Shown piece after piece: positions 20,102 to 50,520 of a DNA stretch of 64,000 nucleotides. Positions within the stretch are counted from its first letter, which is position 1; every line of letters begins with the position of its first letter. The notes below the pieces were generated by a model. That model was not told the origin of the DNA, made no database searches, and worked only from the letters and a program-made list of their open reading frames with translations. Made by a program: the position numbers and the translations under genes. The DNA is taken from positions 441,345,261 through 441,409,260 of the forward strand of contig NC_133620.1 of assembly GCF_048593235.1 (NCBI RefSeq). Reading direction: 5' to 3'. This DNA is from Sminthopsis crassicaudata. Lineage: Eukaryota.

Positions 20102-20873
<772 letters not shown>

Positions 20874-20918
20874 GCCGACTCGGCTCCCGGGGCCGAAAGG
20901 CTCACTCCCGAAACCAAC

Positions 20919-20934
20919 GGCTCTTTTCAGAGCC
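20919..20934 (+). terminator. Histone mRNA 3' stem-loop (H2A)
   Basis: GGCTCTTTTCAGAGCC-ACCCA, then HDE-like GAAAAGGGGCTG. Confidence 0.97.
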
Positions 20935-22148: not shown

Positions 22149-22734
<586 letters not shown>

Positions 22735-22772
22735 GGTGCCGCTTTCCGCCCGTGGAAGTCTACACCCCCAAA

Positions 22773-22788
22773 GGCTCTTTTCAGAGCC
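22773..22788 (+). terminator. Histone mRNA 3' stem-loop (H3)
   Basis: GGCTCTTTTCAGAGCC-ACCCA, then GAGAGTAGCTG. Confidence 0.97.
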
Positions 22789-23593
22789 ACCCACGATCTC
22801 ACGAGAGTAGCTGTAATCGCGCCCATTTTTTTTTTTCCTTCCCTCCCTCCCCTAACCTTGCAACTGGCACTTATTTCTGGGTTTCGCTGCATATAGAAAT
22901 GGAATTCATGGGCCTTCCCTTGGACGGTCAGCGGATTTTCAGGGTTTTGATTCTTGTACAAATGACATGGCAACTTGGCAGGTGGGTCTTTTCGGCGGAA
23001 GTAGCCGCGAAACGGCAGCTTCCTCTTGGTCCCTGCTGCTGTCTTGACCCAATGACGAAGGACTGACTCCCGCAAGTGCCCGCGTACTGCGGAGACAGAT
23101 GGTTAGCTAGTGAATGCGCCGAGGGCGGCGCTGCGTCCAATTCCTTTTGCCCTCCCTGCCCTCCCTGCTGGTTTTACTTGCGCGCACGCACACAAGTCAG
23201 GAGTGGAGCATGCACACTGGCAACTAAACGTTTTTTAGTAAACTTCCGATTTGGGGGAGAAAGAGGGGGGAAAGAGCAAAGCAAAACCCCTCTCCTTGTT
23301 CAACGCACAGACTTTGGCCAACTGGGCAAGGGAGACAGACGGGGGACGGGACATTTTTTTTTCTTAACACTGCCATCAGCACAAGGAAAACGAGGAGGAG
23401 CGAAGAACATTGGGTTGGATGGATATATGCTACTTATTATTAAATAATTTTTACGATATCTTACTTTTATTTGCGAATTTTTTTTTTTTTATTTGCTCAT
23501 TTAGGTGGGTTTTTTATTTTAATAGGATTGCAATATTTTCTCTAGAAACTGGCGGGGTCGAGAGGTTCAGCTCTTTTCCTGAGGCGAGTGGGT

Positions 23594-23609
23594 GGCTCTG
23601 AAAAGAGCC
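23594..23609 (-). terminator. Histone mRNA 3' stem-loop (H1)
   Basis: GGCTCTTTTCAGAGCC-ACCCA on the minus strand, then HDE-like AGGAAAAGAGCTG. Confidence 0.97.
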
Positions 23610-23641
23610 TTTGGGTGGGTCAAGGTTCGAGCGCTACCTCT

Positions 23642-24300
23642 CTACTTCTTGGCTGTCGCCTTCTTGCTTTTGGCGGCTTTGGGCTTCGCCGTCTTGGGCT
23701 TGGCCACCTTCTTGGCCTTGGCCGCCTTGGGCTTAGCTGGGCTCTTGGCCACCTTCTTGGGCTTGGCCGCCTTGGCCTTCTTCGGGCTCTTGGTCGCCTT
23801 CTTGGCGGCCGCCGGCTTCTTGGCTTTCTTCGGGCTCTTCTTCACCGTCTTCTTGGCGCCTGCGGCACCCGTCGCCTTCTTGGGCTTCTTGGCGGCACCG
23901 GCAGCCTTCTTGGTCTTGGCCGAGGCCGGCTTCTTGGCCTTAGTCTTCGTGTCGGCCGTCGGGGCCTTCTTGTTCAGCTTGAAAGAGCCCGAGGCGCCGG
24001 TGCCCTTGGTCTGCACCAGGGTCCCCTTGCTCACCAGGCTCTTGAGCCCCAGCTTGATGCGGCTGTTGTTCTTGTCCACGTCGTAGCCCGCCGCCGCCAG
24101 CGCCTTCTTCAGGGCTGCCAGGGACACGCCATTGCGCTCCTTGGAGGCGCTCACGGCTTTCGTGATCAGCTCCGACACGGGCGGACCCGCGGCCTTGCGC
24201 CGCGCTCCCCGGCGGCCGAAGCCCGCTTGCCCTTCTTCTTGGCCGGAGCCTTCTCCGCGGGGGCCGGGGCAGCGGGAGCGGCGGGGGCCGTCTCGGACAT
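23642..24300 (-). CDS. Replication-dependent linker histone H1 with a 1-bp frameshift at the C4 run 24207-24210
   Basis: [11 protein letters not shown] start at 24300; globular domain (GPPVSELI...[38 protein letters not shown]) and KSPKK tail; ATG to stop is 659 bp, and one extra base gives 219 aa. Confidence 0.9.
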
Positions 24301-24389
24301 GGCAGCGAAGGGACCGTACAGCAGCGACAGCGAGAAGTCACTAGAGGACGCCGCGGACTCGCGAATAAGCGAGCTCCGCGCTGACCCAC

Positions 24390-24440
24390 TTATATATAGG
24401 TAAGGGCTGCGCCGTGATTGGTGCGCTGCCCCCAGCCCTC
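24390..24440 (-). promoter_or_regulatory. H1 proximal promoter
   Basis: CTATATATAA at 24390-24399, CCAAT at 24417-24421, GC-box-like GAGGGCTGGGGGC just upstream. Confidence 0.75.
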
Positions 24441-41068: not shown

Positions 41069-41172
41069 TTCTGCCCTTCACCCCTCCCCCAAGACAACCA
41101 ATCAAGATACAGGTTGTACATGCAACAATTATATAAAACATTTTCATATTATCCATTTTGTTCAGGAAGAGC

Positions 41173-41218
<46 letters not shown>

Positions 41219-41545
41219 AAGAATAGCATGCTTTAGACACTATCAATTCTTTCTCTGGAGGCAAATAGTATGCTTCATCATTTATTCTTTAGGATTTGTC
41301 TTAGATCACTGTATTGTTGAGAATAGCCAAATCATTCACAGTTGTTCATCAAACAATATTGCTGTTACTGGGTATAATGTTCACCTGGTTCTGTTCACTC
41401 ACTTCATTTTGTATCATGTCATGTAATTCTTTCCAGGTTTTTCTGGTATTATCCTGCTTGTCACTTCTTATACAACAATAATATTCCATACAATAGGCAT
41501 CCCCTTGATTTCCAATTCTTAACCACCACAAAAACAGCTGCTACA
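41069..41545 (-). mobile_element. Old L1 3' UTR fragment, the insertion target of the provirus
   Basis: Minus-strand MEYYCCIRSD-like tail similar to the other L1 3' ends; limits approximate. Confidence 0.6.
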
Positions 41546-41938
41546 ATTATAAAATCCCCTTTTTTTCAAGAAGCCTTTCTCAATTAAACCTAATGCTAAT
41601 GCTTTCCCATTGTTGATTTTCTCCAATTCATCTTTTTTGGGCATAATGGTTTAGATTTTGTTCTTACATTTAGACTGTGAGCTCTTTGAGAACAGAGAGT
41701 AACTACATTTTGTCTTTCTTTTACCCAGTGCTTAGTAAGGTGCTTGGTGCATATTAGATTATTAATGGTTATTTGATTGATTGTTATCCATTCTTTAGGG
41801 AGATCAAAATGACACACCTATGTTAGAATGACGTTACAGTGTGTCTTATTATGTTGATCAGATCAGCACAAATTCAGGATGCTTCTGCCTCAGGCCAGGC
41901 AGAAAAAAATTCACATGAATATTTGGAGTAGATTCTCT

Positions 41939-41941
<3 letters not shown>

Positions 41942-42020
<79 letters not shown>
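41942..42020. repeat. (CT)n microsatellite
   Basis: Seen directly. Confidence 0.95.
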
Positions 42021-42023
<3 letters not shown>

Positions 42024-42893
42024 AATTTTTGCTACTTCAATTCTGCTTTGGTCAAAGCACACATCAGCTTCTTTGATATGGGCTCAACATGCTGGGCCAT
42101 CCTGTGCCAGTGTCTCCCATGTCATACAATCAATTCTAAAGTTCTAAAGAGATCTTGAGATCTTTTTCTGACTACCATATGATCATTTGGCCTCTGTGAA
42201 TTATCCATAAAAGGTTTTTGTGGGGTTTTTTGGTGGTTTTTTTTTTGTTGTTGTTTTTTGTGGAGGATAAAAAAAGGTATTTAATAAATCTTTGTTTACT
42301 AGACTTCTGCAAATTCATTCAAACCTTCACTCAGCACAGCATTTGACACCTAGCAAATGACTGTTGAATTAACTTCCAAGCATCAATTCAAATTCTTCCT
42401 TTTTCTTTCATACTTAGTATAGAGCCTGGCAAAATAATAAACCTTAATTTTTTTTTTTAAATTCATTTATACTATTACTATTTTCCTTTTCTGTTAGCAC
42501 CTTGTTTCCACCTTTTATAAAATCCTAACCCTAAATGCACTGGTCCAGTCCTGATAAAGTTAACAACTGCTAAGCAACTTCCTCAAATTTATTATATTAT
42601 ATATTATTTATTATTATTGTTCAACTCAAATTCAAAATAATACATCTACTTTATTTTCCATCTGATGAAAGACTTTTATTAAAATGTAGGTGTTGACAGC
42701 CTGCCCAGTTTTCATTATTCCAGGATTTGAGCTTATTTCCTAGTGAATGATTATCCCAATTATTGGAGTCCTTTAAATGGAATTCCTTGTACAATTATTC
42801 TGTAGAAATAGAAAGGCTCCTACTGAACAAGATTTCACCTCCTCCCAGAACTATCCTTTTTCTTTATATATGGTGAAGTAATTCCCAAAAGCA

Positions 42894-43881
42894 ATTCTTC
42901 ATAGGTAACAGTTCTCTCCTCCAACCATCATAAGGGATTTATTTTCAGATTGATCCTAAAATCCAGAGACTGAATTTTCTTTTTAAGAACCCTATATTTT
43001 GGATGTAATTATCTTCCTATTTATCATAATTCTTTTTCCCCTTTGTAGATCTCTTCATGTAGAACATTCAAACTTCTAAATCATTTCCTAAGCAAAGAGG
43101 AGAGAATCTGGAGCAGTAGTCTCAAACTTTTTTTGATTGCATGTCTCTGAAAGAAAATTTTTGATCTCACTCTCTGAATAAATATTTACTTATTTACAAA
43201 TTACATATATGTCCTAATAATCTTGTAAAGCTTACACAAAATTATAAAAAGTATGAGATAAAGATAAAATGATATTATATTTTATTCCCAATTGGGAATG
43301 AATAAATGATTAGATTGGTGATTTGTGAAAATTGTTTTGGTAGGTGTGTGAAGGATAGATTAAAGAGAGACCAGAGACAAAGAGACTAATTAGAAAAGAA
43401 TCAGAATTAGTGAGGGTATGAACTACATTAGTGGCATTTAGATAAAGTATGGATATACAAGAGATTTTGGGGGGTAGAAATGACAAGATTTGGCATTTGA
43501 TTAGATATATGGGGTAAGGGATATTGATGGGTCAAGGAAAATACCAGGTAATTGAAGAGATAGTAATGCTTTCAATAGAAATAGGGAAGTTTAGAAGAGG
43601 AACAAGATTGGGATGAAAGGTAATGTAATCCCTACCTACATGTGCTTGCGCATCTTGTGCTAACTAGTTCCTCTTCCACTAATACTTACTCACTTACTAG
43701 ATTGTGCTAATGGCAGGCAGTGAGTGGATAAGTTGCTTTAGGTCTCTATGTGTAGAGTAAGGTTATTACCTCCCTATCCAAGTCGTGCTAGGCTTGTCTC
43801 CATCACAAGCAACAACCTTTATCCCCAATTATTCTTACTATTCCCTACCCTAAAAAGCAGCAGCTTCAGCCATTAGAAAAA

Positions 43882-43947
<66 letters not shown>

Positions 43948-45398
43948 CTCACACAAACTCCTCCTCCTGATGACCTGTGACTATGGCAAGCTCACCATAG
44001 AAGGTGGGTTTTTGTCCTTCAGACAGTATGTTAAAAGGCATCTCCAGTGAACTAGGAAAACATCTTAACAGTTAAATGTTCTGATAAAGGCCTCATTTCC
44101 AAAATATACAGAGAATTGACTCAAATTTATAAGAAATCAAGCCATTCTCCAATTGATAAATGGTCAAAAAATGTGAACAATTTTCAGATGATGAAATTGA
44201 AACTATTTCTACTCATGAAAAGGTGTTCCAAACCATTATTGATCAGAGAAATATAAATTAAGGCAACTCTGAGATACCACTACACACCTGTCAGATTGGC
44301 TAAGATGACAGGAAAAGATAATGACAAATGTTGCAGGGGATGTGGGGAAACTAATGCATTGTTGGTGGAATTGTGAATACATCCAGCCATTCTGGAGAGC
44401 AATTTGGAATCATGCTTAAAAAGTTGTCAAACTGTGCATACCCTTTGATCCAGCAATGTGTTTATATCCCAAAGAGATCTTAAAGGAGGGAAAGGGACCC
44501 CGTATGTGCAAGAATGTTTGTGGCAGCCCTCTTTGTGGTGGCCAGAAACTAGAAACTACATGGATGCCCATCTGTTGGAGAATGGCTGAATAAATTGTGG
44601 TGTATGAATGTTATGGAATATCATTGTTCTGTAAGAAATGACCAGTAGGATGAATACAGAGAGACTTGGAGAGACTTACATGAACTGATGTGAGTGAAAT
44701 GACCAGAACCAGGAGATCATTATACACTTCCACAACGATACTATATGATGATCAATTCTGATGGACACGGGTGCCTTCCATAATGAGAGGATCCAAATCA
44801 GTTCCAATTGATTAGTAATGAACAGAACCAGCTACACCTAGCAAAAGAACTATGGGAAATGAATGTGGACCACAACATAGCATTTACACTCTTTCTGTTA
44901 TTGTTCTTGCATTTTTGTTTTCCTTTTCAGGTTTGTTTTTTTGTTTTGTTTTGTTTTTAACTTTCTAAATCTGATTTTTCTTGTGTAGCAAGACAACTGT
45001 ATAAATATGTATACAAATATTGTATTTAACATATATATACTTTAACATATTTAACATGTATGGGACTACCTGCCATCTAGGGGAGGGGGTGGGGGGAAAG
45101 GAGAGGAAAAATTGAAACAGAAGTTTTTGCAAGGCTCAGTGTTGAAATATTACCCATGCATACATTTTGTCAATAAAAAGCTATTTTAAAAATTAAAATA
45201 AAAATAAATTCTTGGAGAAAAAAAAAGACTTCTTTTTTGATTTAAAGTGAGACTAAGTGGCACAGTATAAACAGGCATAGTGGGATTAGTAATTTTATTG
45301 CAGATCTCAATACATTCTCTTCCTCCTCACTTCCTTTTCTAAACTTTTTTTATTACTGTCAAGATCACCTCCATTCTGGTTACCCAGATTCACAATCT
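42894..45398 (+). repeat. Direct segmental duplication, right copy (2505 bp; probable donor)
   Basis: Matches 31162-33656; its flanks show no truncated elements. Confidence 0.97.
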
Positions 45399-45499
45399 AA
45401 GTTTTATCTTTAACTTATTGTTCCCCTTCATTTTACTATTTGTTTGGTTGACAAATTTGGTTATTTCATCTTCTAAAATAACTTCTGCATGTATCCACT

Positions 45500-45725
45500 G
45501 AGTCACTATTTCATTTCAGGCACAGTGGACTTGGGGTCAGAAAATCTGAGTTCACATCTGGCTTCAAACAGTAGTAGTGTTTTGGGGCAAGTCTCTTCAC
45601 CCTGAATGCCTTAGTTTTTTCATCTATCAAATAAACTGGAAAAGGAAATAGCAAACCACTGCAGTAATAGCAAACCACTGCCAAGAAAACCTCAAATAGG
45701 GTCACAAAGAGTCAAAAACAACTTT
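45500..45725 (+). mobile_element. Mar1-like CORE-SINE with RTE-type tail
   Basis: CORE followed by GAAAAGGAAATAGCAAACCACT...GGGTCACAAAGAGTC. Confidence 0.65.
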
Positions 45726-46328
45726 GCAATGGTCACTAATTGGCCCTCCTGACTCGTCTCATCCCTTCTAATTCATTTTCTTGATTGCTCCTAAAAATTA
45801 TTTTCTTAATGATATGTGATCATGTCATACAGACTCCAGTCATCTCTATTGATTCTGGGATCAAATAACATCTCAGCTTTATCTCATTTAACTTTTATTT
45901 AACTTTCTCATTTCTATTTTGATATATTTTGTAGTTCTTAGTATTGCAATAGTACATTATATGATTTAGAAGAAAATGAACCTACAGTGGGGCCATACTT
46001 TTAAAATGTTTTACATAACTTGATATGGAATCCAAAAAGTGTGGAGATGGCTAGTCTAAAGGATTATCATTTGGAAGACAACAAAAATTTCATTAAATTA
46101 ATTCACCTGAAATGCTACCTTCTTGATTAAGTAAAGTATTTGGCTTAGAAGAGTGATCCTTTCTAAATTTGTAAGGATATTAAGGTTTCTAATATAACTT
46201 TCTTTCAATAAAAGTAAAAAAGAACACCACCATTATCACCCAGGGCCTAAGAATGCAGGATTCACTACACCAGGCTATTTCTGGGATCAATTCTGACTGA
46301 ATGTAAATAGTAATGTCCTTTCTGTGTT

Positions 46329-46478
46329 NNNNNNNNNNNNNNNNNNNNNNNNNNNNNNNNNNNNNNNNNNNNNNNNNNNNNNNNNNNNNNNNNNNNNNNN
46401 NNNNNNNNNNNNNNNNNNNNNNNNNNNNNNNNNNNNNNNNNNNNNNNNNNNNNNNNNNNNNNNNNNNNNNNNNNNNNN
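46329..46478. other. 150-N run of unknown content
   Basis: Seen directly; lies in TE-free sequence downstream of H2B. Confidence 0.95.
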
Positions 46479-47983
46479 CTGCCTCATTTCCTACCTATTT
46501 AGGTTAACTTGAAAAGGCCCAGATTTCCCATTGCATCCAGAGCTATTTCCAGTCATCCTAGGAAGCACAATCGTTTCAACAAAACTCTATAGAGATTTTC
46601 CCCCCTCTCCCTACCTATAGAAAAGTAAAGTTAACTTTGGGGAAAGCATAGGTTTGGCAGTCAAAGGGCCCATATTCAAATCCTGCTTTTCCAGTAATAG
46701 CCTGTCCCAATTTGGGCAACTGACATCCCATCCCCATAATTGTTTTCTCTTCCTGAGCTCTAGACATAGACTTTGGCTTCCCGACATAGATGGGCTGGTT
46801 AATATTTTTAGTTGCTTGTTTATTAGGCAACCCTAGGTCTGGATTCCAGATCAACTACTCTTTTTTAAAAAAGCTTTTTTCTAGACTCACATTAAATCTA
46901 TCTTATTTTGTCCTCAGACTAATGTTAGTAAAAATGTGCCTGATGTGATTGGCTAATATTTTCTAAGAAGGATTTACTTTTTCTAGCTCAGCCGCTGAAG
47001 AAAGTGAAAAAGATGAAAGCAGGAGGAAAAGTCTCTAGGGAAGGATTTTCTTCCGCAGGTCATTGTTAAAACTTGATTGAAGCTCATTTGAAAAGGGAAA
47101 TCGGTTTAATCCTTTGAGGGGGAGAGGGAGGAAGGGGAAGAGCAAAATACCTTCTCTAGGTCTCCCATTCTTGTTTGTTTTCTTTAGCACACAGCCCTGA
47201 ACATTGTAGATGCTCATGTTGTTTTAGAAGATGAAATCTTTCACCTTGTATTGGAGTATTTTGATTCGAAATAAAATGTATGTACTTGTTCCATAATGTC
47301 AGGCATTTAGAGATTGTTTTCACAAATATTCACAAAACTATAACAGATTGAAGGAAAAGATAGAAATGGAATAGAGGAATAGTTTGTTCAATATCTTACA
47401 ATGAATTACACAGTGCATGGAAATCCTGTATTGTAATGCATGGAAGAAGTCCAGGAGGCTCGGAAGTCCTCCAGTGAAAGGAGAGTAAACAGTATCCATT
47501 AGCCAATTCGAAAACGGCGAGGGACTTTCGAATTTTAATGCTACCCAATGGCAAAAGGAGTCCAGTGAATTGGGAGGGTAAAGGTTTTGCTGAAATCAAG
47601 GCATGTTAGCCAGTAATAAAATTTTGCTCCCCACCATCCCACCCCCACGATTTTAAACGACTCCCTATTAAGGTCTTTTTACTTTCATACATCTTAAAAT
47701 AGTGGGACTTGTGAAATGGATGCTGCAAAAAGCAGTCAGCTGCTGAGCTCCATGCAAATAGGTGCCCAAACAGCACGCATTTTAGAAATTGACTACACAA
47801 AGAGGATTTAATTGGACACCAAAAGTTGTTAGGTTAACACAAATCATTTCTAAGCCTGAAGTTCCAAAGCTGGTAAATTTCAACAGCCATTGCTACTTCC
47901 AAGGACATCCCCAGGAAAGCAAGTCATGCTTGCACAACTTCACGGCTTAAGTTAGTTAGAGCTCTTTTTAGGACTAGATAAGT

Positions 47984-47999
47984 GGCTCTGAAAAGAGCC
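47984..47999 (-). terminator. Histone mRNA 3' stem-loop (H2B)
   Basis: GGCTCTTTTCAGAGCC on the minus strand, then HDE-like AAAAAGAGCTC. Confidence 0.97.
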
Positions 48000-48038
48000 T
48001 TTTGTTCACAGGGAGCCTGCCCCTTNNNNNNNNNNNNN

Positions 48039-48419
48039 NNNNNNNNNNNNNNNNNNNNNNNNNNNNNNNNNNNNNNNNNNNNNNNNNNNNNNNNNNNNNN
48101 NNNNNNNNNNNNNNNNNNNNNNNNNNNNNNNNNNNNNNNNNNNNNNNNNNNNNNNNNNNNNNNNNNNNNNNNNNNNNNNNNNNNNNNNNNNNNNNNNNNN
48201 NNNNNNNNNNNNNNNNNNNNNNNNNNNNNNNNNNNNNNNNNNNNNNNNNNNNNNNNNNNNNNNNNNNNNNNNNNNNNNNNNNNNNNNNNNNNNNNNNNNN
48301 NNNNNNNNNNNNNNNNNNNNNNNNNNNNNNNNNNNNNNNNNNNNNNNNNNNNGAGCCTTGGTCACGGCTTTCTTGGAGCCCTTCTTGGGGGCAGGGGCGG
48401 ACTTGGCCGGCTCGGGCAT
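48039..48419 (-). CDS. H2BC21: Histone H2B, core masked (48026-48352); stop inferred
   Basis: MPEPAKSAPAPKKGSKKAVTKA; position and orientation match H2BC21 relative to the two H2A genes and BOLA1. Confidence 0.88.
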
Positions 48420-49146
<727 letters not shown>

Positions 49147-49188
49147 TTTTGGTCTAGCAACTTACACGTGATAACACCAAAGACAAAA

Positions 49189-49204
49189 GGCTCTTTTCAG
49201 AGCC
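49189..49204 (+). terminator. Histone mRNA 3' stem-loop (H2A)
   Basis: GGCTCTTTTCAGAGCC-ACCCA, then AAAAAAGAGCTG. Confidence 0.97.
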
Positions 49205-49293
49205 ACCCATTACATCAAAAAAGAGCTGAAACGCTGAGATGTTGAATTATTTTTTTTCAGTGATAATAGCCCCTTAATCTGATAGAGGAGGGT

Positions 49294-49309
49294 GGCTCTT
49301 AAAAGAGCC
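49294..49309 (-). terminator. Histone mRNA 3' stem-loop (H2A), TTTA loop variant
   Basis: GGCTCTTTTAAGAGCC on the minus strand, then weaker HDE-like TAAGGGGCTA. Confidence 0.95.
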
Positions 49310-49353
49310 GTTTGGGGGGGGTGGAGGGACAAGTTCTAGTCCCCCTTTATCGC

Positions 49354-50084
<731 letters not shown>

Positions 50085-50465
50085 ATGCCTGAACCAGGAA
50101 AATCGGCTCCTGCCCCCAAGAAGGGCTCCAAGAAAGCCGTGACCAAGGCTCNNNNNNNNNNNNNNNNNNNNNNNNNNNNNNNNNNNNNNNNNNNNNNNNN
50201 NNNNNNNNNNNNNNNNNNNNNNNNNNNNNNNNNNNNNNNNNNNNNNNNNNNNNNNNNNNNNNNNNNNNNNNNNNNNNNNNNNNNNNNNNNNNNNNNNNNN
50301 NNNNNNNNNNNNNNNNNNNNNNNNNNNNNNNNNNNNNNNNNNNNNNNNNNNNNNNNNNNNNNNNNNNNNNNNNNNNNNNNNNNNNNNNNNNNNNNNNNNN
50401 NNNNNNNNNNNNNNNNNNNNNNNNNNNNNNNNNNNNNNNNNNNNNNNNNNNNNNNNNNNNNNNNN
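50085..50465 (+). CDS. Histone H2B variant (MPEPGK), core masked (50152-50477); stop inferred
   Basis: MPEPGKSAPAPKKGSKKAVTKA, with promoter and stem-loop. Confidence 0.88.
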
Positions 50466-50504
50466 NNNNNNNNNNNNGGAGTCATCGACTTCCCATGAAA
50501 CAAA

Positions 50505-50520
50505 GGCTCTTTTCAGAGCC
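50505..50520 (+). terminator. Histone mRNA 3' stem-loop (H2B)
   Basis: GGCTCTTTTCAGAGCC-ACCCA, then GAAAAAGATGCT. Confidence 0.97.

What the first reader, a model, noticed from the sequence alone, without database searches (positions are those of the whole stretch)
23594..24440. A linker histone H1 gene inside the HIST2 cluster
Seen: a complete H1 with TATA/CCAAT, stem-loop and HDE follows H3 on the minus strand, in a locus anchored by H2AC21 and BOLA1. Established: human and mouse replication-dependent H1 genes are all in HIST1, and HIST2 has none. The equivalent slot and orientation in human holds H4C15 (as recalled), and no H4 occurs in this window. With H1, this small cluster has representatives of all histone classes except H4 (possibly outside the window). 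Inference: an ancestral HIST2 H1 lost in eutherians, or a marsupial-specific H1 subtype. It has DVDK where the canonical motif is DVEK.
Basis: partly seen in the sequence, partly recalled or inferred. Interest (0 to 1): 0.75.

Follow-up and report, generated by a model that had tools for sequence, protein, structure and literature searches.

The report
Frameshifted H1 gene in marsupial HIST2
A linker-histone H1 gene of an old marsupial lineage does sit in the fat-tailed dunnart's BOLA1-linked (HIST2-type) histone cluster, where placental mammals have none, but in this assembly one missing base breaks its reading frame, so whether it still makes protein is open.

Summary
It has an H1-type CCAAT element, a TATA box, an Rfam-scoring histone stem-loop and a purine-rich downstream element, and it lies tail-to-tail with H3. 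The cluster is anchored by an H2AC21-type H2A and BOLA1. The window is fat-tailed dunnart assembly GCA_048593235.1.

The gene is not "complete" as assembled. One base is missing at codon 32 (window 24206-24210, a G run in 74% GC). The ATG frame stops after 44 codons, and the globular domain and tail lie in another frame with no start codon. The H1/AC box is also absent.

The gene's only close relative is an opossum model, UniProt A0A5F8GZN5 (clade support 100/98). A recent copy of the sampled dasyurid H1 type is rejected (AU p = 0.017). The globular domain is identical to the opossum protein, so the gene was under selection until very recently.

I favour an assembly indel or a very young lesion over an old pseudogene. 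Whether the gene is ancestral to all mammals or marsupial-specific is unresolved. A platypus unit has the same H1-H3-H2A-H2B order.

The scan earlier found a comparable TRIM11-linked five-class cluster on other DNA of this genome.

The parts
23568..23614 (-). 3' end signals of the H1 mRNA: stem-loop at 23594-23609 and purine-rich downstream element (GGAAAAGAGCTG) at 23568-23579
   Evidence: Exact stem-loop consensus. Rfam RF00032 match at 23569-23614, 35 bits against gathering 34, E = 1.6e-7. Sequence read.
23642..24205 (-). H1 coding part 2 (frame B): end of the N-terminal tail, the winged-helix globular domain and the Lys/Ala-rich C-terminal tail, 187 codons plus the stop at 23642-23644
   Evidence: Translation. 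88-96% identity to mammalian H1 proteins that carry PF00538, E down to 5e-67. The tail is 40% Lys+Arg with three S-P-x-K sites.
24206..24210 (-). Frameshift site: GGGGA where GGN-GGA (Gly-Gly) is expected, so one base is missing
   Evidence: The opossum relative P0054 reads AAGGARRK here. The local GC content is 74%.
24208..24300 (-). H1 coding part 1 (frame A): ATG and 31 normal N-terminal codons. As assembled this frame runs on to a stop at 24166-24168.
   Evidence: The N-terminus is near-identical to P0054 and to other H1s.
24390..24426 (-). Core promoter: H1-type CCAAT element (24409-24426) and TATA box (24390-24398). There is no H1/AC box upstream.
   Evidence: Alignment with the Antechinus and platypus H1 promoters. 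No AAACACA within 800 nt.
22324..22788 (+). H3 gene (partly masked) with its stem-loop; the convergent neighbour of H1
20481..20934 (+). H2A gene (130 aa) with stem-loop
19657..20101 (-). H2B gene (middle masked) with stem-loop, on the same strand as H1 and downstream of it
47984..50520 (.). Quartet H2B(-) H2A(+) H2A(-) H2B(+), conserved in Antechinus, koala, Dromiciops, opossum and brushtail possum. The H2A at 49354-49746 is the H2AC21 type.
62562..62987 (+). BOLA1, the synteny anchor
   Evidence: 99% identical to Antechinus BOLA1. Antechinus has SV2A next to it.

Best explanation
This is a genuine replication-dependent-type linker histone H1 gene. It belongs to an H1 lineage that already existed before Australian and American marsupials split, and it lies in the dunnart counterpart of the HIST2 cluster.

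Shown: the gene, its position, its cis elements, its opossum relative, and its strong protein conservation.

Inferred: in the animal the gene is, or was until very recently, intact and encodes about 219 aa. The inferred way it works is as follows.
- It is transcribed from a CCAAT/TATA promoter that lacks the H1 box.
- Its mRNA ends at the stem-loop through SLBP and U7 pairing with the downstream element.
- Its product binds the nucleosome dyad and linker DNA through a winged-helix domain and a basic tail with CDK sites.

The single missing base at codon 32 is most likely a consensus indel error of the assembly at a G run in very GC-rich DNA, or a lesion of the sequenced haplotype, and not the mark of an old pseudogene.
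For: - All 3' and core promoter signals are intact.
- There is only one lesion. It sits in GGGGA, where the opossum relative has Gly-Gly.
- The globular domain is identical to opossum P0054. There are 8 differences in the 117 compared columns outside the stretch I masked (93% identity), and one more by eye at the end of P0054's H1 part, despite about 80 My of separation.
- Dunnart and Antechinus intergenic DNA here is 83-89% identical. Neutral decay since that split would therefore have given roughly 10 replacements in the globular domain alone. None is seen.
- CpG observed/expected is 0.83 across the gene.
- Four small RNA-like runs from two studies hold 0.59-0.60 of the sampled words.
- First-reader notes of this scan list many single-base frameshifts in conserved genes of this assembly, for example IFT22, ACP5 and P2RX5 exon 1 (unchecked leads).
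- Earlier dunnart drafts were PacBio CLR + Flye + Pilon (PMC11091235, PMC12563553).
Against:
- The three H2A genes and BOLA1 in the same window are intact, so local base accuracy is not obviously poor.
- The sequencing technology behind GCA_048593235.1 was not established.
- NCBI has annotated this assembly (XP_ records), yet no protein from this locus is in the protein collection.
- No protein of this lineage is on record from NCBI's opossum, Antechinus, devil, Gracilinanus, Dromiciops or bilby protein sets (seen). The only record is a chimeric Ensembl-derived opossum model.
- The H1/AC box is missing.
Confidence: 0.55

Rival explanations
1. Young unitary pseudogene. The one-base deletion is real and fixed, or common, in dunnarts. 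The gene lost its H1 box and then its frame. It now yields at most a 44-residue peptide, and the HIST2-type cluster is in the course of losing its H1, as the placental cluster already has.
For: - The frameshift is in the assembly.
- The H1 box is absent.
- No annotated protein comes from this locus, nor from this lineage in NCBI sets of other marsupials.
- The other coding sequences of the window are intact, so an error here would be a local exception.
Against: - There is only one lesion.
- The globular domain is unchanged relative to opossum, the CpG content is kept, and the 3' signals are perfect.
- The loss would have to be at most a few million years old.
- It cannot be shared with Antechinus, given 11-17% intergenic divergence.
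- Human H1.1 also lacks the H1 box and is a working gene (PMC12240685).
Confidence: 0.36
2. A recent dunnart- or dasyurid-specific transposed copy of an H1 from the large TRIM11-side cluster.
For: Histone clusters exchange genes, and both clusters lie on one chromosome.
Against: - Its nearest relative is an opossum sequence (100/98).
- A clade with the sampled dasyurid H1 is rejected (AU p = 0.017).
- The order H1-H3-H2A-H2B is also found in platypus, whereas the Antechinus TRIM11-side unit differs.
- Not every dunnart H1 paralogue was sampled.
Confidence: 0.04
3. An assembly misjoin placed an H1 from elsewhere beside H3.
For: None found. Only one assembly of this stretch was available, because L006 and L017 are the same assembly as the window.
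Against: - There are no gaps other than the deliberate masks between H2B, H2A, H3 and H1.
- The 3'-to-3' spacing of H1 and H3 (about 800 bp) matches the platypus unit.
- From window position 29.5-30.1 kb rightwards (towards the quartet; for Antechinus on through BOLA1) the window is collinear with Antechinus, koala and Dromiciops.
Confidence: 0.03

Closest known systems
Opossum model UniProt A0A5F8GZN5 (P0054), filed as 'Histone H2B'
   Same: Its first 152 residues are the same H1 lineage. It shares an identical globular domain that includes DVDK, the SASKERNG stretch and the KKAP-x-ADTK start of the tail. The clade has 100/98 support.
   Different: It is a chimeric annotation spliced onto an H2B. 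Its genomic place is unknown to me. Its N-terminal frame is intact, reading Gly-Gly where the dunnart copy lacks a base.
Placental somatic replication-dependent H1.1-H1.5 of the HIST1 cluster
   Same: Tripartite protein, intronless gene, H1-type CCAAT element, TATA box, stem-loop and downstream element.
   Different: It lies in the BOLA1-linked cluster, not in HIST1. It is not assignable to any H1.1-H1.5 subtype because the tree backbone is unresolved. It has no H1 box, a trait shared among human H1 genes only with H1.1 (PMC12240685). Its frame is broken as assembled.
Marsupial TRIM11-linked proto-cluster with H1 (PMC13396413; scan note s1-176095)
   Same: A marsupial histone cluster that still holds an H1, while its small placental counterpart has none.
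   Different: A different cluster. That one corresponds to HIST3/HIST1 and lies 139 Mb away in dunnart and 141 Mb away in Antechinus. Its H1 is a different lineage. The paper does not treat the BOLA1-linked cluster.
Platypus histone unit on CM014225.1 at 3.82 Mb (L008)
   Same: The same order and orientation, H1(+) H3(-) H2A(-) H2B(+), with similar 3'-to-3' spacing of H1 and H3. It lies on the chromosome that carries BOLA1.
   Different: It lies about 1 Mb from BOLA1, is followed by an H4, and sits beside a cathepsin L/V-like gene that is not a 1q21 marker. Its H1 has an H1 box. Orthology of the units is not shown.

Membership tests
Replication-dependent linker histone H1 gene | Winged-helix globular domain (Pfam PF00538) flanked by a short N-terminal tail and a long Lys/Ala/Pro-rich C-terminal tail with S/T-P-x-K sites | tested here: met
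   88-96% identity to H1 proteins that carry PF00538, E down to 5e-67. The tail is 40% Lys+Arg and 28% Ala, with SPKK twice and SPAK once.
Replication-dependent linker histone H1 gene | Uninterrupted intronless reading frame from the ATG to the stop | tested here: not met
   One base is missing at 24206-24210. The ATG frame stops at 24166-24168, and the second frame has no start codon. Whether this is true of the animal is untested.
Replication-dependent linker histone H1 gene | 3' stem-loop followed by a purine-rich downstream element instead of a poly(A) signal | tested here: met
   Exact stem-loop at 23594-23609. Rfam RF00032 at 35 bits against a gathering score of 34.
Replication-dependent linker histone H1 gene | H1-type promoter: TATA box, extended CCAAT element and upstream H1/AC box (AAACACA) | tested here: inconclusive
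   TATA and GCGCACCAATCAC are conserved. The H1 box is absent, whereas the Antechinus and platypus H1 promoters have it 57-58 nt upstream of the CCAAT. Human H1.1 also lacks it (PMC12240685).
Replication-dependent linker histone H1 gene | S-phase expression with a non-polyadenylated mRNA | not testable with these tools
Run shares of 0.59-0.60 in four small RNA-like runs are only a hint.
HIST2 (cluster 2) orthologue | Direct linkage to BOLA1 (and SV2A), with an H2AC21-type H2A and its H2A/H2B partners next to BOLA1 | tested here: met
   BOLA1 at 62562-62987. SV2A-like gene beside BOLA1 in the collinear Antechinus locus. The 130-aa H2A is identical to the one 8.5-9 kb from BOLA1 in two placental assemblies.
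Old (decayed) histone pseudogene | Several lesions, replacement changes in conserved domains, loss of CpG and of the processing signals | tested here: not met
   One lesion only. The globular domain is identical to opossum, CpG o/e is 0.83, and the stem-loop is perfect.

The most novel reading that the evidence does not exclude
The BOLA1-linked H1 is a working marsupial linker histone retained from a five-class ancestral mammalian histone unit (H1-H3-H2A-H2B, as still seen in platypus). On this reading placental HIST2 lost its H1. Because this gene lacks the H1 box, it would be a replication-type H1 regulated independently of the CRAMP1-read H1 promoter motifs.
Probability: 0.3. Interest if true: 0.55.

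Novelty: new member of a known kind. Interest (0 to 1): 0.38.

Why it matters
Human and mouse keep all replication-dependent H1 genes in HIST1. A 2026 paper (PMC13396413) showed that marsupials keep a fuller proto-cluster for HIST1/HIST3. This locus extends that picture to the third cluster, because the marsupial HIST2 counterpart still carries an H1 of an old lineage. That lineage is not described in the papers I could search, and the protein searches found it only as a mis-joined opossum model.

If the gene is intact in the animal, it adds an unrecognised H1 subtype with an unusual promoter to an emerging marsupial laboratory model. If the frameshift is real, it catches a cluster in the act of losing its linker histone. 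If the frameshift is an assembly error, it is a warning about single-base indels in GC-rich genes of this assembly.

Tried and rejected
Local scripts masked them for BLAST and for the tree.

2. Reaching the orthologous H1 place in other marsupials.
- The exact look-up of BOLA1 was blank.
- Loci around BOLA1 and around the two variant H2A genes end at window-equivalent 29.5-30.1 kb in Antechinus, koala and Dromiciops. That is 5-6 kb short of H1.
- Opossum and brushtail possum gave no DNA.
- I did not look up the canonical H2A, H2B or H3, because their products are shared with human and would return unrelated and possibly human contigs.

3. A search with the tail of the opossum model found no other member of the lineage.

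4. I first took the cathepsin beside the platypus cluster for CTSS/CTSK of 1q21. It is cathepsin L/V-like, so I dropped it as a marker.

5. DVDK as a hallmark was rejected, because it recurs in bat H1s.

6. An alternative start codon for the second frame does not exist.

7. Literature. The H1.1-H1.5 evolution paper has no marsupials, and the H3.4 paper does not treat the BOLA1-linked cluster.

8. L006 and L017 turned out to be the window's own assembly. I did not read or use their letters under the window's N runs. I took no fetched contig for human.

Full report
WHAT IS THERE. The minus strand between 23568 and 24426 carries a histone H1 gene.
- The ATG is at 24300 and the stop at 23642-23644.
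- An extended H1-type CCAAT element lies at 24409-24426 and a TATA box at 24390-24398.
- A perfect 16-nt stem-loop lies at 23594-23609, and a purine-rich downstream element at 23568-23579.
- Rfam's Histone3 model matches 23569-23614 at 35 bits, against a gathering score of 34. The neighbouring H2B, H2A and H3 genes score about the same.
- The protein part from residue 33 onward finds mammalian H1 proteins carrying PF00538, at 88-96% identity over the globular domain and E down to 5e-67.
- The C-terminal tail is 40% Lys+Arg and has three S-P-x-K sites.

The window holds eight histone genes with stem-loops:
- H2B(-) at about 19.7-20.1 kb;
- H2A(+) at 20481-20873;
- H3(+) at 22324-22734;
- H1(-);
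- after a retroviral stretch, a quartet of H2B(-), H2A(+), H2A(-) and H2B(+) at 48.0-50.5 kb.
BOLA1 follows at 62562-62987. No H4 is present in the unmasked sequence.

The gene is not complete as assembled.
- From the ATG, 31 codons read as a normal H1 N-terminus. The frame then runs into nonsense and stops at 24166-24168, after 44 codons.
- The rest of H1 (187 codons, 23645-24205) is in another frame. That frame has two stops in the 5' leader and no ATG.
- The two frames meet at GGGGA (24206-24210). The opossum relative reads Gly-Gly at that point. Antechinus and platypus paralogues have GGC-GGA there.
- So exactly one base is missing, inside a 74%-GC stretch.

SOURCE GENOME AND CLUSTER.
- A locus fetched through the variant H2A is 100% identical to the window. 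It comes from GCA_048593235.1, record CM109184.1. A 2026 preprint names that assembly as the fat-tailed dunnart genome.
- BOLA1 is 99% identical to that of Antechinus flavipes.
- The Antechinus BOLA1 locus is collinear with the window and has an SV2A-like gene on the far side, as in human.
- The H2A at 49354-49746 is identical in protein to the H2A lying 8.5-9 kb from BOLA1 in two placental assemblies. There it is followed by the same H2A(-)/H2B(+) pair.
- The quartet is also called in opossum, koala, Dromiciops, brushtail possum and Antechinus.
- The cluster is therefore the HIST2 counterpart.

KINSHIP OF THE H1.
- The only close relative found is UniProt A0A5F8GZN5 of Monodelphis. It is filed as 'Histone H2B' and is a chimeric model. 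Its first 152 residues are H1 and the rest is an H2B.
- Its globular domain is identical to the dunnart translation, including DVDK. There are 8 differences in the 117 compared columns outside the stretch I masked (93% identity), and one more by eye at the end of the model's H1 part.
- In a maximum-likelihood tree of 25 H1 proteins, the two form a clade with 100/98 support on a stem of 0.12. The backbone among marsupial, monotreme and placental H1 groups is unresolved.
- AU tests reject a pairing with the sampled dasyurid H1 of the other cluster (p = 0.017). They do not reject a single marsupial clade (p = 0.12) or a clade with the monotreme H1s (p = 0.27).
- The two annotated Antechinus H1 genes found here (the top-120 hits) lie at 181.6-181.7 Mb of the chromosome that carries BOLA1 at 40.67 Mb.
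- So the H1 is not a recent copy of that sampled type. Its lineage predates the split of Australian and American marsupials.
- I could not find where the opossum gene lies. An H2B downstream on the same strand fits both kinds of unit.

ANCESTRAL OR MARSUPIAL-SPECIFIC? This stays open.
- In platypus an H1 lies about 1 Mb from BOLA1 on the same chromosome. It sits in a unit H1(+) H3(-) H2A(-) H2B(+) H4(-). That is the same order, orientation and roughly 800-bp 3'-to-3' spacing of H1 and H3 as in the window. The Antechinus TRIM11-side unit has no H3 between H1 and H2A.
- This hints that the dunnart unit is a relic of an old five-class repeat. But the platypus cluster is not next to BOLA1, and its neighbour is a cathepsin L/V-like gene with no bearing on 1q21 synteny.
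- No histone gene or stem-loop lies within 10 kb of BOLA1 in platypus, opossum, a turtle or an alligator.
- Attempts to reach the H1 position in Antechinus, koala and Dromiciops stopped 5-6 kb short.

GENE OR PSEUDOGENE? An old pseudogene is excluded.
- Intergenic DNA of dunnart and Antechinus here is 83-89% identical. Neutral decay since that split would have put roughly ten replacements into the 70-odd codons of the globular domain. There are none relative to opossum.
- There is a single lesion, CpG observed/expected is 0.83, and the processing signals are perfect.

That leaves two readings: an assembly or haplotype indel, or a very young loss.

For an assembly indel:
- The site is a G run in very GC-rich DNA.
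- Earlier dunnart drafts were PacBio CLR assemblies polished with Pilon (PMC11091235, PMC12563553).
- First readers of this scan have listed dozens of single-base frameshifts in conserved genes of this assembly, such as IFT22, ACP5 and P2RX5 exon 1. These are unchecked leads.

For a real loss:
- The other coding sequences of the window are intact.
- I could not establish how GCA_048593235.1 was sequenced.
- NCBI has annotated this assembly, yet no protein of this locus is on record. No protein of this lineage is on record from NCBI's sets of other marsupials either.
- The H1/AC box is missing. It is present 57-58 nt upstream of the CCAAT in the Antechinus and platypus H1 promoters, and no copy lies within 800 nt here.

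The last point is not decisive. Human H1.1 also lacks the H1 box and the CH1UE, and it is a working gene (PMC12240685).

Four small RNA-like runs from two studies hold 0.59-0.60 of the sampled words of a 1301-base query. The predicted mRNA makes up 0.58 of that query. This would fit expression, but I could not lay the runs.

I put an intact or barely broken gene at about 0.55-0.6 and a real young pseudogene at about 0.35.

LIMITS AND COMPLIANCE.
Local scripts masked them for BLAST and for the tree.
- L006 and L017 are the window's own assembly. I did not read their letters under the window's N runs.
- I took no fetched contig for human.

COMPARISON WITH WHAT IS KNOWN.
- The idea that marsupial histone clusters are fuller than their small placental descendants, H1 included, was published in 2026 for the TRIM11-linked cluster (PMC13396413).
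- The papers I could search do not treat the BOLA1-linked cluster, nor this H1 lineage.
- The finding is thus a new member of a known kind. It is of moderate interest, and its functional status hangs on one base.

Noticed in passing
L014:11345-20393 (Antechinus) and L016:11660-20393 (koala); equivalent to the H2B at window 48039-48419(-): NCBI gene models splice the quartet's outer H2B to an exon more than 8.7 kb downstream, running towards the H1 side. The products are 131 aa in Antechinus and 126 aa in koala. This suggests a spliced, probably polyadenylated, H2B isoform conserved in marsupials.
   Followed up: no
L008:11538-11985 (platypus CM014225.1): An H3 gene with a stem-loop lies between H1 and H2A but is not among the called genes of that locus.
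   Followed up: partly
window 48039-48419 versus L012 and L015: Marsupials have an H2B on the H1 side of the H2A/H2A/H2B trio, and also one on the BOLA1 side (window 50085-50465), which makes a quartet. The two placental loci that share the identical H2AC21-type H2A show only H2A, H2A and H2B, and lack the H2B on the BOLA1 side.
   Followed up: partly
window 41078-47650 and 31162-33656: Much of 41-47.6 kb aligns at 66-77% with koala and Dromiciops and at 83-84% with Antechinus, so it is old host DNA and not provirus. 31162-33656 is a 98.6% duplicate of about 42.9-45.4 kb. This bears on the scan's note about a templated insertion.
   Followed up: partly
window 23471-23523 (-): Three AATAAA/ATTAAA signals lie 70-125 nt downstream of the H1 stem-loop. 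Read-through polyadenylated H1 transcripts are therefore possible and could explain capture in poly(A)-selected libraries.
   Followed up: no
one search hit list (P0012, P0016, P0035, P0059, P0088, P0091, P0054): Many database 'H1' or 'H2B' proteins of mammals are chimeric H1 plus core-histone models. This is a recurrent annotation artefact in histone clusters and can hide real H1 genes.
   Followed up: no
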